Positions 55,054-64,000 of a DNA stretch of 64,000 nucleotides are shown here, in pieces. The position numbers were made by a program, and so were the translations under genes. Location of the stretch: the NCBI GenBank assembly GCA_963924565.1, contig OZ004613.1:21266001-21330000 (forward strand), in the 5' to 3' direction. The notes below the pieces were generated by a model. The model was given only the letters and a program-made list of their open reading frames with translations, searched no databases and was not told where the DNA came from. Source of the DNA: Ascidiella aspersa (lineage: Eukaryota). Position 1 is the first letter of the stretch. Every line of letters begins with the position of its first letter.

Positions 55054-56882
55054 ATGAAACCTTGTGTAAACATTTTTCCCCAACCCAGCATGGCTGATGC
55101 AAAAGTTTCTGTTCAAGTCACAAGTAACTTATGGTTTGACTGTCACCCATCTATGACACAGCTACAATAATTGTTTAACTTATTTTCAGATTTACCTATT
55201 AATGCATATGTGACAATCTATGCTTCAACTTATTCAGAAAAACTTTTATTTGATAGTTTTGCAGTCTATGATACTGGACCAAAAGGTACATAAACTTAAT
55301 TTATATATACAAAAGTACTATGAACATGACGGACTTGTTTTTACTAGGTAAAATTGATTTAGGATTAAGTGAATCAATTTTGGGAACTTACTCAGGTATT
55401 AACCAGATGGGATTGTTAATGTCATTGGAACCTTCAATTTTAAACGAGGTATTTAAGCTACACAAAAAACTTGATGTAAATACAAATTAATTAAACTACC
55501 TACATTTTCAGATTAAAAATGCAAGATTTGTTGTAAAAGATGTGACAAAGACACAAAATATAACACTTGCAATTTATACTGGACGTTACACTTCCATTTC
55601 TGATCTACGCTCAGACAAAACAAAAGTATGTTTGACGAGGCAAGATATTTTACGACTTTACATGTCACCTAGTACAAGAAGAATTCTTATTAACGAAAAC
55701 AAAGTTAAAGGAACACTGTTCATACCAAAAGGAAAGGGGCCATTTATAGGTATTTTAGAAATATGTATATATGTATGTTATGATTTTTGTTTTTAATTAA
55801 ACTTTTTGGTTTTAATAGTTTTAACTCTTGTGCATTAAATCGTTAAGGACATAAAATACACCAATTATTTGGTTAAAAACATTGACAATGCCTATTAGCA
55901 GTGTCAGGTAGAGTGCCTAAAATATTCCTTTTGTTGTATACAAAAAAAAATATGTTCACTAGTATTTTAATAAAATATTTAGTTTAACACACAGCCAATA
56001 TTTTTCTGCAATATGCAACTTTTAATAATATTTTACCAATTATTTTAAGTGCTGACAATTTTATGATCTCAACTACCTTGAATGACAGGTGTGATTAACA
56101 TGCTTGGTGCAGTAGCAAACCCAAATGAAGCAAAATCAGCTCTTCTATCATCGCATGGATTTGCCACCTTAAATCTCAAGTATTTTGGATTTAGAAATTG
56201 GGTGTATCATATAAATATGGAGTTTTTCGAAGCTGCTTTAAATTTCATGAAAAATCATGAAATGGTGAATGGAGCTGAAGGTATATCAGTTGTTGGATTG
56301 TGTAAAGGTGGCCAAATTGCTTTGTGTATGGCTGATTGCCTCAAAGACATAAGGTCGGTAATCGCGATCAATTGCTCAATTGTACCAGTTCATAACTCTC
56401 ATTATTTCCATGACCAGCTATGGCCTGCAGTTGAAGAAGGTAATTTGTTTTCTCTTCCAATGAATAGTAGCAATGTAGTCCATCCTAGAAATATTTTTTT
56501 CCCTCTTACATACAACATGAATCCCACTATGGATAAGAGATCTATGTTTAAATTCTTCAATAAACTTAACATTCCCTTTTTGTTTCTGACAGCTTTGCAA
56601 GATGATAATGTTCCATCTGAACACTTTACAAATCAGGCTGAGCGCCTGTTTAAATTAGCTAAGCATCCTAATTATAGCATTATAAGGTACCCAGGTGCTG
56701 GCCACTTACTTTCACCTGCCTATACTCCTTTTTGTGTTCGAAGTCCCGTTGCCGGAATATACACTAACTTGGAATGGGGCGGCCTAAAAATTCCCCATTG
56801 TAAAGCTCAGGTTGATGCTTGGGACAAAACCATATCGTTTTTGAAAGAAAAATTTTTGCCTGACAAAATCAGCAAACTTTAA
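55054..56882 (+). CDS. Peroxisomal acyl-CoA thioesterase / bile acid-CoA:amino acid N-acyltransferase family protein, 432 aa, 5 exons
   Basis: Exons 55054-55123, 55190-55285, 55348-55448, 55512-55749, 56089-56882, in phase (1299 nt). N-domain GKIDL..GTYSGINQMGL and GTLFIPKGKGPF; nucleophile elbow GLCKG; QDDNV; YPGAGHLL; C-terminal SKL (PTS1). Confidence 0.92.
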
Positions 56883-58774: not shown

Positions 58775-59172
58775 CGCAATAAAGCAGGTTAAAAACTCAC
58801 GCCTTCTTTTTTAAACAAAAAGTGCTAAACTAATCACTGAATAATTACTGAAAATAATTATTGCTAATAACTGAATAATCCAAGTTTTTTGACTTTTTAT
58901 TTGAATAATTAAGCATAATAAATTAAAACATGTGTGTTATTATTGAACCTAGCCTACTAGTACTGTGTTATTACGAGTATAGTTACATTGCCACAAAGCG
59001 TTTTTCAGTTTATTCACCAGTTTCAACAAGACCTTAATATGCAAAAAATGGCAATTGAAATACAGCTACGTTATATTTAATCTGAGTATGTGCAACGAAG
59101 TAAATCAGTTTTTATAATCCATGCATGCTCAGTTTTGGTCGATCCGCTAGGGTCCTTCCATTAACATCCCAT

Positions 59173-61477
59173 CTATTCTAGCAGATCATCATCTAGAAAA
59201 CAAATAATGAGATCTACTATGGTGGCCTACATATGTAACGTTTATCTGACTTCATGTGTTTGCATGTTACGTGGATAGGTCTTCAACTTAAACAATAAAT
59301 TGTGGTTGTTTAACACTGCATTTATAGCGTCTCGTAAAGAAAAAGTTTATCAAACCACAAAAATTGAATGCAGTTTTATACAACATAAAAAAGTCGAACA
59401 ATAGAGCGGTGAACGCAAAATGATGCCCCGCAAGCTTGAGATGTTTTCACGATTTTTTAACTATTAGGACTTTTATTATACCGTTTTTGTAACGTAACGT
59501 AACATTTCTTAAGCAGGGACTGTATTATAGATGTCCTTGGATTGACGACACCCGGCTAATTTGTCGATTTAACCTACCGAATTGGGGGGCTAACAGATTG
59601 TTTAATTGCTTGATTTTTTCCTCTGCATCTGCTTTGTCGGAGGAAGCCTGAATGTCTTTTGCGATTTCCGCTATTGTTTGGTCAAACATGTCCGGATCCT
59701 AAAAATATAAAATTTTTACTATCGGAAAACGGGCTTTGTTCGACTGCGACATATAACTGTTTTATAGGAAAGGTATCCTAACTGTTACATTCACGGGACA
59801 ACTTTCTTCATTACACAGTTATAGTTAAGGAAGATAAATACAACAGTGGTTCCTAACCTTGATTTGATCAAACCATTCACAAAAAATGAAAATAATTTAA
59901 TTGTATTTTGTTAATAAATCATTGGATGTAAAAAAAATTTCTATAAATTTATAGGCTGCTTAGGCCTTTAATGCGCGATTGAATACAGTTAAACCATTTT
60001 AGTTATGAACTGCAGCACACGAACGGTTCCATTGAATTTTATCGTAACACCCGAGAGACTCTACCGTTTTTGCACTTACGTGTCGACTGTCGCACTATGC
60101 CAGTGTTATTATTTAGTTATTTTGAAATGACATAATTAGTTCCAGTCAAGTCAATTAAAGCAATTAGTCAATTTTAAGTCGTTGACATAAAAAGTAAACG
60201 TTAACTATTAAAATTGGGTATTTAGCTCGATTATAAACAAAACTTCTCCAAAAAAATAACAAACACCCAACATATTGCAAGCAAAAGCTTTTACGTGCGA
60301 AATTTAAGATAAATAACTAAATTTTTAATGAAAACACTTTAATTCAACCAACGCCATTTGTCCAAAAGACTTAAGTCAAGTCAAGGCAATTGAAAACCTA
60401 AAATAAGTGTATTACAACACTGCATATATATGCTGTGTAAAAACAATTCACGTCAAATTTTAATTTTTCTTTTACCATTATTACAACTCAAATTTTAATT
60501 TTTCTTTTACCATTATTTAAAATTATATGTAAGGCATCAAGTTAGAGTCTTTTAACTCAAACTCTGCACACATTTTTGAAGGACTTTAAAATGTGCGCTT
60601 ATACAGAAGTAATTGTGCGCATATTTTCACGTGCACATCGGGCTAATTGGAGGGCCACCGTTAAGAAACACTGGTTTTGTCTGTATTCTATTATTACACT
60701 TTTGAAACTATAACTATGAGCGTAATAATAATAATAACAAAACAATCTTCCAAGTTAAAACTGTATAACATACTTGCGACTGAAGATTTTTCAAATAATC
60801 GACGGCAACATCCATGTTTTCCTGGTCCCAGAAACGTAGGCCTTTTAGTACCCACCTTCCAATTGTCTTGGCGATTCGTAACGTCCTAAAACCGACACAA
60901 CATAATTTGTTACGCAATATTAATTTGCACATCAAAGTACTCTTTACAAAACTTTGGCTATGTAAAGCGTAATCCAACAGCATTTTTCAGCAATACCATT
61001 TGCATTTTTGGCCTACTACAGTATGTGCGGCGCCACATACAAATTGGTATAAATACCAGTGGAACAAAAGACACACGGTCATAACATTTTGCAGTCGTGA
61101 CGTTAAACAGTAAAAAATATGAAAACCCAGCGCAAAATTAGTTAACACGTTTGCAAGTCATTTTTAAATGACTTAAGACAAAGTCAAGTCTTTTACAAAA
61201 ATAAAAGGAAATATTAAATAAAAAAAATAGTTTTATGAAACAAAGTCACGTGACATAATAGCTTAAGGCAAGTTAAGCTTTTCAAGACCAGTGACTTAAG
61301 TGTATTACCTTAAATCCTTACAACCCTGGTATACACAACAGCGAAGTAAAGTGCCACTCACTTGTGCCACGAGCCTCTCCATCTTCTTCGTCTTGTGACT
61401 CGGTGAAGACGTCTATTTGACTCGGTAAAAACAACCAAGGAAAGAATAGACAACAATAGAAGGGTTTTGTTGTTCAT
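59173..61477 (-). CDS. Secreted cationic (antimicrobial-type) peptide precursor, 122 aa, 4 coding exons
   Basis: Exons 61477-61362, 60885-60774, 59698-59578, 59192-59173 with GT-AG introns and matching phases 2/0/1 (369 nt): MNNKTLLLLSILSLVVFTES-NRRLHRVTRRRRWRGSWHKTLRIAKTIGRWVLKGLRFW-DQENMDVAVDYLKNLQSQDPDMFDQTIAEIAKDIQASSDKADAEEKIKQLNNLLAPQFDDDLLE*. Confidence 0.85.
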
Positions 61478-64000
61478 GACCAACGTTCCTAACCACCATA
61501 TAATAAAGTTATGTTAAAATAATATAAGACAACAGTAGTAACGGTACGAATCCGTAAAATGCCACGCACAACAGTACCAACCTTACTTACTTCTATTATT
61601 CTTGTATAGGCGTTTTTTACTCTGTAAATACAGACCTATGTTTTACGACAAAAGTTTTTTTTTTGACAAATAGTGTCGCAATATAAATGTACATATTTGC
61701 TAATATTAGTCAATGCACACTTTTAACCGTTTTAGAAATAATAGGACTTTAAAAGACCAGACAATTATCTGAATTCATATATATAACTATAGTTCAAAAA
61801 TCTTATCTTTACCGGTTCCCTTGCATCCAAAGTTACAAACGCTTAATTTAAAAATGTTGCATTTCATACCCATATATAAAGCACATAACAATATACCTAT
61901 TTCTACCCTACGCAAAACGGATCGATTCGCAAAAGCATTCAAGACCAGTATCACGCAAGAGGGAAAAAATCAAAAAAAGTTCGGTCATTGTTGCAGATAG
62001 TTCAGCAGCCATATTTTTACATACAAACCTTGGTTCACGTTATAGCATACTTTCAGTGCGACTTTTATTCACAAAAATTTGCATCGCTAAAGAAACAAAT
62101 ATTGACAATCCAAAAACGTCTTGATGTCGCCAATGCGAAATATATATATATTACCTTTAACGAACGTTTGATCGGTGCAGTTTATGACTTTTTGAAATTT
62201 GAGTTTTTACGTTTTGCACACAATATTCTCGAAATTGTTAAGCGGTAAAAAAAATGTTGACATCATTTTGTTGTATTAAAAGCTTGTAAAAGTCCAAATC
62301 TACACGTAAAGGCTTATGAGTAAAAACTCGGCCGGGCCATACTGTCGCCTAAGCAAAACCAGTTCACAAAAAATCAGTTTGGGTTCGGTTTTGGACTCCC
62401 TGGTTTACCCCGTATATTTACAAAGAACTATATAAAGAACTACCTTGATTTACGGCACTACGAATCGATTTACAAACAACGCAAATAAAATGCTAATTCG
62501 AGTCTTTTCCCATTTTGGAGGAATTTGTTCATAAAAGTCTGCCTTATGCCATACAAAAACATACGAAATTCCCTAGATTTTGCAATAATATTGGAAACAT
62601 TTTATATATGCTTTTAATTGGTTTGTGCGTGCAAATTGAGCTCGTGCGAATATGATCATATTAATTTGCAAAAAGTTTATAGAAAATTTCAAAAATGCAT
62701 GGTCGTGCATTTTGAAATCACTAAGACGTGAGATATATACATACTTCTCCCAATTATCATATTGGTTGGTAGATTCAGGTTAAGCTATTTGCATTTTTCC
62801 GTTTTGCGAGGAGTTTTTATTATTTTAATGGTAATTTGCGTAGCAACATATGGCGAAATTCCAAGGTATATTTGCATGTATTATTTAGTGCTATGCGCTA
62901 ATTACTACAAATGACCAAATTTGACTTCTTACCATTCATCATTTCAATAGCCAAAGCAGCTCATTGTTAAAGCCTAATAAAAAAGTCTATAAACGTTTTT
63001 AAAAGTATGCATTACAGATTTACGCGCCTTCATGCTAATTGTTGTATTGTAGAACGGGATAGTGCGCGTCACAAAGTATTCAGTAAATTCAAAGACAAAT
63101 CAGACCATAATATCAGCTATTATATCACATTTTTTTGCAGACATTTGTAATTATCACAGATTTTAATTAGTACAAACTTTTCTATAATCACCCTTGACGT
63201 AATTTGCGCATTATGGTGCGAGCACACTATAACTTAGTCTAATTAGCGAGGTTTCATCATCAAAAACAACTGAACCAGCACTTCGTTATACGTCATTATC
63301 ATTGAAACAGTAGTCATGAGAAGGGACCAGTGCCAAGTCGTTCATAACTTTATTATCCCTTTGTAGAGCATAGTCTCTCCTGTATTGCGACTTTCAAAAT
63401 TTTTAGTAAAAAAATAAAAAAACGTATTTTCTACTATTTCGGTTTTAGGTCTTCTTGTTAAATAACCACGCATGTAATCTAATTTCTGTACAAGTATTTG
63501 CGTGATAGCTTGGTCAAATGTAACCCCGGTCCGACTTAAATAACCAATCTTGTAATATTCGTTAATTATGAAAAAAAATGAGGTGTTTAAGGAAAGCTTC
63601 TTAATAAACTTATAAATACCGTTTACGTAGAAGTTTTGAACCATCTTCAACAAGTTTAAATAGATATTATATAGGAGTGTTTGACCAATTTATAGCGTCA
63701 AGTTTTTTAATAAGTTAGCAGCAAATCGCATTTATTTTTTATATTTAATGTTATTTAATAAAATTTGCATCGACAAAATATCCCAAACAATAAAGAATCC
63801 AAATATGATATTGCTTTACAATTTGGTCAAAATATAAGATCAAAATAGTTTGTGGAGTAAGGTAAGCTATATTAGGGTTACCATATTTTCGTGACCTGAA
63901 ATCCGGACACTCTTTAGTCCCCACTAGCGGTTTTTAAAATGAGGTATGAACACATTGTCTGTCAATATGACATCACCCTAGCAATGCTTTGCCTAACCAT

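What the first reader, a model, noticed from the sequence alone, without database searches (positions are those of the whole stretch)
59173..61477. Hidden 4-exon gene for a new Arg/Trp-rich antimicrobial peptide precursor
Seen: a 20-aa signal-like peptide; a 38-aa segment with 11 Arg, 3 Lys, 2 His, 4 Trp and no acidic residue (+14); then a 64-aa tail with 17 acidic and 5 basic residues (about -12). An RRRR cluster precedes WRGSWHKTLRIAKTIGRWVLKGLRFW, which has amphipathic-helix spacing. The ORF track shows only one exon of it. Established: signal + cationic helix + anionic C-terminal propiece is the layout of ascidian haemocyte AMP precursors (clavanins, styelins, Ciona MAM/PAP families). Inference: this is an AMP whose acidic tail neutralises the active peptide, possibly released by furin-type cleavage after RRRR. 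I do not recognise the sequence itself.
Basis: partly seen in the sequence, partly recalled or inferred. Interest (0 to 1): 0.85.

Follow-up and report, generated by a model that had tools for sequence, protein, structure and literature searches.

The report
Sea-squirt cationic defence-peptide precursor gene
A small four-exon gene, with two of its three splice joints seen directly in RNA reads, encodes a secreted precursor with a strongly positive Arg/Trp-rich helical peptide and a negative tail, the usual build of sea-squirt antimicrobial peptides; it is a new member of a known kind and its killing activity is untested.

Summary
On the minus strand, four exons (61477-61362, 60885-60774, 59698-59578, 59192-59173) with canonical GT..AG introns give 122 codons. 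These are a 20-aa signal-like start, a 38-aa segment with 11 R, 3 K, 2 H, 4 W and no acidic residue, and a 64-aa tail with 17 acidic and 5 basic residues.

Stranded RNA reads of the same species label show the exon 1/2 joint (13 reads) and the exon 2/3 joint (10 reads). The depth profile fits exon 4.

The gene has two 151-aa paralogs 6-16 kb beyond the window. They share its intron phases, signal peptide, RRRR cluster, acidic region and C-terminal DDDL motif. Their cationic helix is unrelated and Lys/Val-rich. A conserved frame around a hypervariable payload is typical of antimicrobial-peptide gene families.

The layout matches the linear cationic helical peptide precursors described in Ciona (PMC7387483). 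No protein, Pfam, PDB or literature search found the sequence.

Antimicrobial function, neutralisation by the tail and cleavage after RRRR remain inferences.

Verdict: a real, expressed, undescribed gene family of a known kind. Moderate interest.

The parts
61362..61477 (-). Exon 1 coding part: ATG at 61477, 38 codons plus 2 bases (phase 2). It encodes the signal peptide and the Arg-rich N-terminal half of the cationic segment.
   Evidence: The RNA joint to exon 2 has 13 reads. The homologous exon 1 of the paralogs has the same phase.
61418..61477 (-). Signal-peptide-like first 20 codons: n-region MNNK, a 13-residue hydrophobic core, then T-E-S with small residues at -3 and -1.
   Evidence: Read by rule; SignalP was not available. 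It is 45% identical to the paralog signal (BLASTP E 3e-5). The hydrophobic core is too short for a membrane span.
61382..61393 (-). RRRR cluster (codons 29-32). It is a possible proprotein-convertase site or part of the Arg-rich payload.
   Evidence: It is conserved in both paralogs (alignment A2). Cleavage is not shown.
60886..61361 (-). Intron 1 (476 nt, GT..AG). It holds a high-copy repeat at about 61154-61194.
   Evidence: The RNA joint skips 476 nt.
60774..60885 (-). Exon 2 (112 nt): it completes the Lys codon, then 37 codons. The first 19 are the amphipathic cationic helix and the last 18 begin the acidic region.
   Evidence: RNA joints are seen on both sides.
60828..60884 (-). Amphipathic cationic helix core (19 codons, net +5, 2 Trp), ending in RFW just before the first acidic residue.
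   Evidence: Hydrophobic moment 0.74 against a shuffle mean of 0.29, reached by 2 of 5000 shuffles. AlphaFold2 helix over residues 2-36 of the exon peptide. The alleles V51A and R-to-K keep its character.
59699..60773 (-). Intron 2 (1075 nt, GT..AG). It holds a very high-copy repeat at about 60355-60397 and a 35-nt tandem duplication at 60453-60522.
   Evidence: The RNA joint skips 1075 nt.
59578..59698 (-). Exon 3 (121 nt, 40 codons plus 1 base): acidic helical proregion, net -5.
   Evidence: RNA depth is confined to it. It is 28% identical and 64% similar to the paralog exon 3 (E 3e-5). AlphaFold2 gives two helices at pLDDT 89.
59193..59577 (-). Intron 3 (385 nt, GT..AG).
   Evidence: Sequence. 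RNA depth is zero across it. The joint itself is not among the rows shown.
59173..59192 (-). Exon 4 coding part: it completes an Asp codon, then D-D-L-L-E and the stop. The acidic C-terminal DDDL motif is shared with the paralogs.
   Evidence: RNA depth starts at about 59192.
58990..59172 (-). 3' untranslated region, about 175 nt, with AATAAA at 59014-59009. The end near 58990-59000 is approximate.
   Evidence: Depth is 14.8, then 6.7, then 0.33 in successive bins. The hexamer was read.
61478..61490 (-). Short 5' leader with an AG 11 nt upstream of the ATG. It is a possible acceptor for a spliced leader or a 5'-UTR intron.
   Evidence: The same AG-plus-11-nt arrangement, behind strong pyrimidine tracts, is seen in both paralogs. 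RNA depth stops inside 61408-61524. This part is inferred, not shown.

Best explanation
This is an expressed four-exon gene for a 122-residue secreted prepropeptide of the ascidian linear cationic alpha-helical host-defence type. Shown: the exons, two splice joints, transcription from the minus strand, the composition, and membership of a three-gene local family. Inferred: the signal peptide is removed after residue 20. The 38-residue cationic part (+14) carries the activity. It consists of an Arg-rich stretch and a Trp-flanked amphipathic helix. The 64-residue acidic helical tail (-12) keeps the precursor near neutral and harmless during synthesis and storage, probably in blood-cell granules. 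Proteolysis at the W|DQE boundary frees the peptide, which then binds and permeabilises negatively charged microbial membranes. Cleavage may also occur after RRRR.
For: The strong, non-random amphipathicity of the exon-2 helix is, and its predicted helicity. The acidic region is predicted as two helices. The precursor has no cysteine and no Pfam domain. Two paralogs lie 6-16 kb away with the same intron phases (2/0/1). They share the signal (E 3e-5), the RRRR cluster, the acidic region (E 3e-5) and the C-terminal DDDL motif. Their cationic helix is unalignable but still strongly amphipathic: moment 0.65, reached by 0 of 5000 shuffles. Between the two young paralogs, exon 1 has 0 of 107 differences, exon 2 has 9 of 163, and the introns differ by 4-11%. 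Alleles keep the frame and the charge. One allele has a 1-nt deletion and a 1-nt insertion 3 nt apart that turn Leu-Arg into Leu-Lys (decoded by hand). [quoted passage not shown] It also reports that synthetic Arg/Trp/Lys-rich segments kill bacteria in high salt.
Against: No activity, processing or tissue data exist for this peptide. The tissue of the RNA run is unknown. The signal peptide was judged by rule only. Net +14 and 122 residues lie outside the ranges used in PMC7387483 (charge 3-10, length 50-100). pN/pS between individuals is about 0.83 from only 8 changes, which is also compatible with weak constraint. Ciona genes with the same layout include Ci-META4 and Ci-META6, named as metamorphosis genes, so the layout is not proof of immunity.
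Confidence: 0.6

Rival explanations
1. It is a secreted peptide with a non-immune role: a hormone-like, neuropeptide-like or developmental (metamorphosis) signal cut out of a precursor by proprotein convertases at RRRR.
For: It is a small secreted precursor with a conserved tetrabasic site. Ciona genes with the same layout carry metamorphosis names, Ci-META4 and Ci-META6.
Against: There is no basic site or amidation Gly at the C-terminal side of the cationic peptide. The putative ligand part is the least conserved part of the family, whereas signalling peptides are usually the conserved part. The amphipathic +14 helix with a counter-charged tail is typical of membrane-active peptides.
Confidence: 0.2
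2. It is a membrane-active or cell-penetrating peptide aimed at animal cells and not at microbes. Possible roles are cytotoxicity in allorecognition, anti-predator or anti-fouling action, or gamete interaction.
For: It has very high charge, an Arg run and Trp anchors. The genome holds several other secreted poly-Arg genes. Botryllus morula cells release cytotoxic granule contents.
Against: There is no direct evidence. The closest described peptides of this build in ascidians were tested as antimicrobials and were active.
Confidence: 0.12
3. The transcript is real but the reading frame is not used: a non-coding or decaying gene.
For: Nearly neutral pN/pS of 0.83 from 8 changes. No homologue in the protein collections.
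Against: The frame is open across four exons in phase. An allele with compensating 1-nt indels keeps the frame. The paralogs keep the same phases and open frames. Exon 1 of the paralogs is identical while their introns differ by 4-11%.
Confidence: 0.04

Closest known systems
Ciona linear cationic alpha-helical antimicrobial peptide (LCAMP) precursors: Ci-MAM-A, Ci-PAP-A and the candidates of Ohtsuka & Inagaki 2020 (PMC7387483), especially the group with the signal consensus starting MNKSALL (includes KH.S921.1)
   Same: The order is signal, cysteine-free cationic amphipathic region, then anionic helical proregion. There is an acidic residue and no basic motif at the boundary. A Trp stands immediately before the boundary: Ciona has W|NQ or W|NE in several members, and this gene has W|DQE. 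Arg runs and Trp/Lys/Arg-rich payloads occur in both. By eye, this signal matches 8 of the 15 specified positions of the MNKSALL consensus in ungapped register.
   Different: This precursor is longer: 122 residues against 50-100. Its tail is 64 residues, whereas PMC7387483 calls the tail short or absent in the MNKSALL group. Its charge is higher (+14). No similarity could be scored, because no reference to the Ciona proteins was available and all collection searches were blank. Homology is therefore undecided.
Styelins, clavanins and clavaspirin of Styela clava, and botryllin of Botryllus schlosseri
   Same: They are blood-cell peptides made as prepropeptides and cut to a cationic helical peptide. 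From my own knowledge of the cDNA papers, the precursors of styelins and clavanins also end in an anionic extension.
   Different: There is no KHK motif (a feature shared by styelins and botryllin). The composition is not His-rich or Phe-rich. There is no Gly before the acidic part. No sequence similarity was detected by any search.
Frog skin dermaseptin-type precursors
   Same: A gene family with a conserved signal and acidic region and a hypervariable cationic helix (own knowledge; PMC7387483 cites conserved signals in LCAMP families).
   Different: In frogs the acidic piece lies before the peptide and is cut at a Lys-Arg site. Here it lies behind the peptide, with no basic site. The two are unrelated in sequence.
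Arg/Trp-rich antimicrobial peptides such as indolicidin, tritrpticin and lactoferricin (own knowledge)
   Same: Arg for charge and Trp as an interfacial anchor.
   Different: Those are short, non-helical or extended peptides from other precursor types. This one has a regular amphipathic helix.

Membership tests
Ascidian LCAMP precursor layout (criteria of PMC7387483) | N-terminal cleavable signal peptide | tested here: inconclusive
   By rule only: a basic n-region, a 13-residue hydrophobic core, and T and S at -3 and -1. It is conserved in the paralogs. SignalP was not available, and the joined protein was not submitted anywhere.
Ascidian LCAMP precursor layout (criteria of PMC7387483) | Cysteine-free cationic amphipathic alpha-helical segment | tested here: met
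   No Cys in any exon. Hydrophobic moment 0.74, reached by 2 of 5000 shuffles. Predicted helix.
Ascidian LCAMP precursor layout (criteria of PMC7387483) | Anionic helical proregion behind the cationic region, with an acidic residue at the boundary and no basic motif | tested here: met
   17 D/E against 5 K/R in 64 residues. Two predicted helices in the exon-3 peptide. The boundary is RFW|DQE.
Ascidian LCAMP precursor layout (criteria of PMC7387483) | Precursor of 50-100 residues and helix charge of +3 to +10 | tested here: not met
   The precursor has 122 residues and the whole cationic part is +14. The 19-residue helix core alone is +5. These are screening limits of that paper and not biological definitions.
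Ascidian LCAMP precursor layout (criteria of PMC7387483) | Microbicidal activity of the released peptide, salt-tolerant | not testable with these tools
   This needs synthetic peptide assays.
Ciona MNKSALL-signal LCAMP family (KH.S921.1 group) | Conserved 23-residue signal consensus | tested here: inconclusive
   By eye against the consensus printed, 8 of 15 specified positions match for the window gene and 8 of 15 for the paralogs, including MN at the start and V-[LF]-x-E near the end. Leu-rich signals match easily by chance.
Ciona MNKSALL-signal LCAMP family (KH.S921.1 group) | Scorable sequence similarity outside the signal | not testable with these tools
   The full Ciona precursors are not in the paper's text or supplement. 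The collection searches were blank.
Ci-MAM family | Conserved signal consensus starting MDRKIVFAL | tested here: not met
   This signal starts MNNKTLLLL, compared by eye with the consensus.
Styelin/botryllin family | KHK motif and at least 30% identity among mature peptides | tested here: not met
   There is no KHK in any exon peptide. Identity to styelin sequences could not be scored, because there was no reference for them.
Local three-gene family on G000:C7 (window gene plus L006 and L008 genes) | Four exons with intron phases 2, 0, 1; similar signal, RRRR cluster, acidic region and C-terminal DDDL motif | tested here: met

The most novel reading that the evidence does not exclude
The window gene and its two neighbours found a previously undescribed ascidian peptide family whose precursor delivers two payloads. 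One is a poly-Arg cell-penetrating or nucleic-acid-binding module, freed at the conserved RRRR. The other is a freely evolving amphipathic helix. Both are held in check by an unusually long helical acidic tail ending in a conserved DDDL motif, which may serve granule sorting. The many 'signal + W/Y-(G)-RRRR' first exons elsewhere in this genome would then be one modular system for generating new defence peptides.
Probability: 0.15. Interest if true: 0.6.

Novelty: new member of a known kind. Interest (0 to 1): 0.4.

Why it matters
It adds a transcript-supported, undescribed gene family to the small set of known ascidian host-defence peptide precursors, in a species outside Ciona. The three genes share a frame but have different cationic helices: one Arg/Trp-rich and two Lys/Val-rich. 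They give a natural experiment on how the payload of such precursors is exchanged while the signal and acidic tail are kept. The Arg/Trp-rich helix is a candidate for a salt-tolerant peptide. For genome annotation, it shows that short multi-exon peptide genes of this kind were absent from every protein collection searched here.

Tried and rejected
Protein collection searches, all blank:
- Exon 3 against 1.84 billion cluster representatives.
- The exon-2 open frame, the paralog exon-3 open frame and the exon-1 open frame against the 5.8-billion-cluster collection. Each query was a natural stop-free frame given by reference, so that full-length proteins fell within the length limits.

Other searches that gave nothing useful:
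- Pfam gave only a sub-threshold CdiI_2 hit at E 0.064 on exon 3, which I treat as noise.
- PDB sequence search gave noise: plectin and designed helical repeats.
- ESM Atlas look-alikes scored 0.90 or less, were unnamed or SpoIIAA-like, and I treat them as noise.
- Rfam gave nothing.
- A full-text search for two short motifs of the window and paralog peptides found no paper.
- A search for the assembly size in papers, to name the species, found nothing.

Complex prediction of the exon-2 peptide against the exon-3 peptide gave no answer (score 0.01, mark 0.34). This is neither for nor against the tail binding the helix.

- The four exons were never joined for any search, fold or signal-peptide tool.
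- Full-length homology search, full-length structure prediction and SignalP on the joined protein were not done.
- One script walked the codons across the exon borders only to name the effect of single-base variants. It printed and saved no joined sequence.
- Ciona, Styela and Botryllus peptide sequences were compared by eye only, from the text of papers, because no reference to them existed.

Readings considered and rejected:
- Membrane anchor: the hydrophobic core has only 13 residues.
- Protamine-like nuclear protein: it has a signal peptide and an acidic tail.
- Chance ORF chain: RNA joints rule this out.

Full report
OBSERVATION

The region was read on both strands and the junctions were located by script. 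The gene lies on the minus strand.
- Exon 1 is 61477-61362. It starts at an ATG and ends AA|GTGAGT.
- Exon 2 is 60885-60774, behind TTTTAG. It supplies the G that completes a Lys codon and ends CAA|GTATGT.
- Exon 3 is 59698-59578, behind TTTTTAG. It ends TTCG|GTAGGT.
- The exon 4 coding part is 59192-59173, behind TTTTCTAG. It completes an Asp codon and stops at TAG 59175-59173.

The lengths 116 + 112 + 121 + 20 give 369 nt, or 122 codons plus the stop, with intron phases 2, 0 and 1.

- a 20-residue signal-like start;
- 38 residues with 11 Arg, 3 Lys, 2 His, 4 Trp and no acidic residue;
- 64 residues with 17 acidic and 5 basic residues.

The mechanical ORF list shows only the 89-residue frame around exon 2.

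IS IT REAL?

One RNA run of the same species label was available as raw reads (X3), and about 6% of it was read.
- It gives a joint 60884/5 to 61361/2 (skips 476; 13 reads from 12 starts).
- It gives a joint 59697/8 to 60773/4 (skips 1075; 10 reads from 7 starts).
- Both joints have CT..AC ends on the + strand, which is GT..AG for a minus-strand gene.
- Outside two intronic repeats, all reads have the first mate on +. This is the usual sign of a minus-strand RNA in stranded libraries.
- Depth lies on exon 1, exon 2, exon 3 and on 58951-59192. It is zero in the unique parts of the introns.

Three things support it:
- Depth is zero over 59302-59535.
- Depth is 0.63 in the bin that holds only the last 8 exon bases, then 14.8 in 59068-59184.
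- The paralogs have the same junction.

An AATAAA at 59014-59009 fits the fall of depth near 59000. The two other runs (X1, X2) cover exons and introns alike and behave as DNA.

A GENE FAMILY

Searching the whole assembly (308.6 Mb, 75 contigs) exon by exon found only the gene itself for exons 2 and 3. Exon 1 found two weak matches, 6 and 14 kb beyond the window end on the other strand.

Reading those places shows two nearly identical four-exon genes of 151 codons, at L006:5798-8551 and L008:3343-6167. They have the same intron phases.

What is shared with the window gene:
- the signal peptide (45% identity, E 3e-5);
- an RRRR cluster at the same place;
- the start of the acidic region at the end of exon 2 (...YLK.LQ.Q);
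- the acidic exon 3 (28% identity, 64% similarity, E 3e-5);
- a C-terminal DDDL motif.

What is not shared is the cationic helix (no alignment). In the window gene it is Arg/Trp-rich. In the paralogs it is a longer Lys/Val/His-rich segment that ends in Gly before the acidic part.

Both helices are strongly amphipathic:
- Window gene: moment 0.74 over 19 residues, reached by 2 of 5000 shuffles.
- Paralogs: moment 0.65 over 30 residues, reached by 0 of 5000 shuffles.

A relic exon-3-like piece lies between the paralogs. Between the two young paralogs, exon 1 has 0 of 107 differences, exon 2 has 9 of 163, and the introns differ by 4-11%.

VARIATION

Against the window, the RNA run shows six amino-acid changes (T5I, L24F, V27A, V51A, I85M, L111M) and two silent changes. 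With 286.7 non-synonymous and 79.3 synonymous sites, this gives a ratio near 0.83. The numbers are too few to test selection.

A minor allele (3 of 8 reads) has a 1-nt deletion and a 1-nt insertion three bases apart, plus two substitutions. Decoded by hand, these turn CTA CGT into TTG AAG, that is Leu-Arg into Leu-Lys. Frame and charge are both kept, which argues for translation.

STRUCTURE AND DOMAINS

AlphaFold2 without an alignment gives one helix for the exon-2 peptide (residues 2-36, pLDDT 86.8). It gives two helices for the exon-3 peptide (2-18 and 22-36, pLDDT 89.1).

No Pfam family reaches threshold. There is no PDB relative and no Rfam match. The precursor has no cysteine.

WHAT IT MOST LIKELY IS

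The organism is a tunicate. A glycoside-hydrolase-6 match, which among animals occurs only in the tunicate cellulose synthase (own knowledge), is present. Earlier notes of this scan also call the genome ascidian.

For Ciona, PMC7387483 reports the following:
- Signals are conserved within families.
- The boundary carries acidic residues and no basic motif.
- Synthetic Arg-, Trp- and Lys-rich segments kill E. coli and S. aureus at low micromolar levels, also in high salt.

The window gene has all of these structural features. It also shows the conserved frame around a variable payload that is typical of such families.

I therefore read it as a host-defence peptide precursor. The signal is removed, the acidic tail offsets the +14 segment until proteolysis at W|DQE, and the free peptide attacks anionic membranes. 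Only the first layer is shown: gene, transcript, composition and family. The rest is inference, at about 0.6.

THE RRRR SITE

It fits the proprotein-convertase pattern and is conserved in the paralogs. Furin is reported in Botryllus morula-cell granules.

A profile of exon 1 also found other genes in this genome whose first exon encodes a signal followed directly by W/Y-(G)-RRRR... runs. Some are followed by an acidic exon (L019, L021, L020, and the L018/L022 pair). Their exon-1 donors are in a different phase, so they are separate families.

Together with the active Arg-run peptides of Ciona, this suggests the Arg run can itself be payload. Cleavage after RRRR stays open.

COMPARISON WITH KNOWN FAMILIES

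By eye, the signal matches 8 of the 15 specified positions of the consensus that PMC7387483 gives for a six-gene Ciona group including KH.S921.1. Several Ciona members have Trp directly before an N-Q or N-E boundary, followed by ...NVEDMD. This resembles W|DQENMD here.

This is a lead and not a test.

The Ci-MAM signal consensus does not fit. The KHK motif of styelins and botryllin is absent.

All four large protein searches were blank, and no paper holds the two motifs searched. The sequence family is therefore undescribed as far as these tools see. Tunicate genomes and transcriptomes as such could not be searched.

LIMITS AND STEPS LEFT OUT

The joined protein was not sent to any tool, so there is no full-length homology search, no full-length fold and no SignalP result.
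- The tissue and condition of the RNA run are unknown.
- The complex test of helix against tail gave no answer and is not evidence either way.

VERDICT

This is a new member of a known kind, of moderate interest.

Noticed in passing
L006:5798-8551 and L008:3343-6167 (G000:C7:21335798-21338551 and 21343343-21346167, + strand): Two nearly identical 151-codon paralogs of the window gene in a roughly 7.5-kb tandem duplication. Their cationic helix is Lys/Val/His-rich and ends in Gly before the acidic part.
   Followed up: partly
L006:9577-9669 (G000:C7:21339577-21339669, +): An isolated exon-3-like open frame between the two paralogs (profile E 4e-14). No matching exon 1 was found. It is probably a relic of a further copy.
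   Followed up: partly
window 60355-60397 and 61154-61194: Very high-copy short repeats inside introns 2 and 1, built on AAGTCAAGTCAAG-like motifs. Summed contig depth reaches about 150,000 in the DNA-like runs. RNA reads lie on both strands with many loose ends. It is probably a MITE-like element.
   Followed up: no
window 60453-60522: A 35-nt unit duplicated in tandem (91% identity) in intron 2.
   Followed up: no
L019 (G000:C7:13608057-13608152, -), L021 (C6:21663845-21663916, +), L020 (C6:419797-419883, -), L018/L022 (C1:27844664-27844753 - and 27848413-27848502 +): Other genes whose first exon encodes a signal peptide followed at once by W/Y-(G)-RRRR... runs of up to 12 Arg. L019 and L021 have an acidic exon downstream. 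L018 and L022 form a head-to-head pair 4 kb apart and contain Cys. The genome seems to hold a varied repertoire of secreted Arg-rich peptides.
   Followed up: partly
window 61478-61490; L006:5784-5797; L008:3329-3342: All three genes have an AG exactly 11 nt upstream of the ATG. In the paralogs it follows long pyrimidine tracts. It is a possible spliced-leader or 5'-UTR acceptor.
   Followed up: no
window 55542-56882 (+): Open frames of 84 and 266 residues that look by eye like an alpha/beta-hydrolase of the acyl-CoA thioesterase / BAAT C-terminal type. This is the next gene on the low-coordinate side. It was not tested.
   Followed up: no
L013 (G000:C5:19613851-19614090, +): A glycoside hydrolase family 6 match (28.1 bits, over the Pfam cut-off). 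This is expected for the tunicate cellulose synthase gene and was used only to place the genome among tunicates.
   Followed up: no
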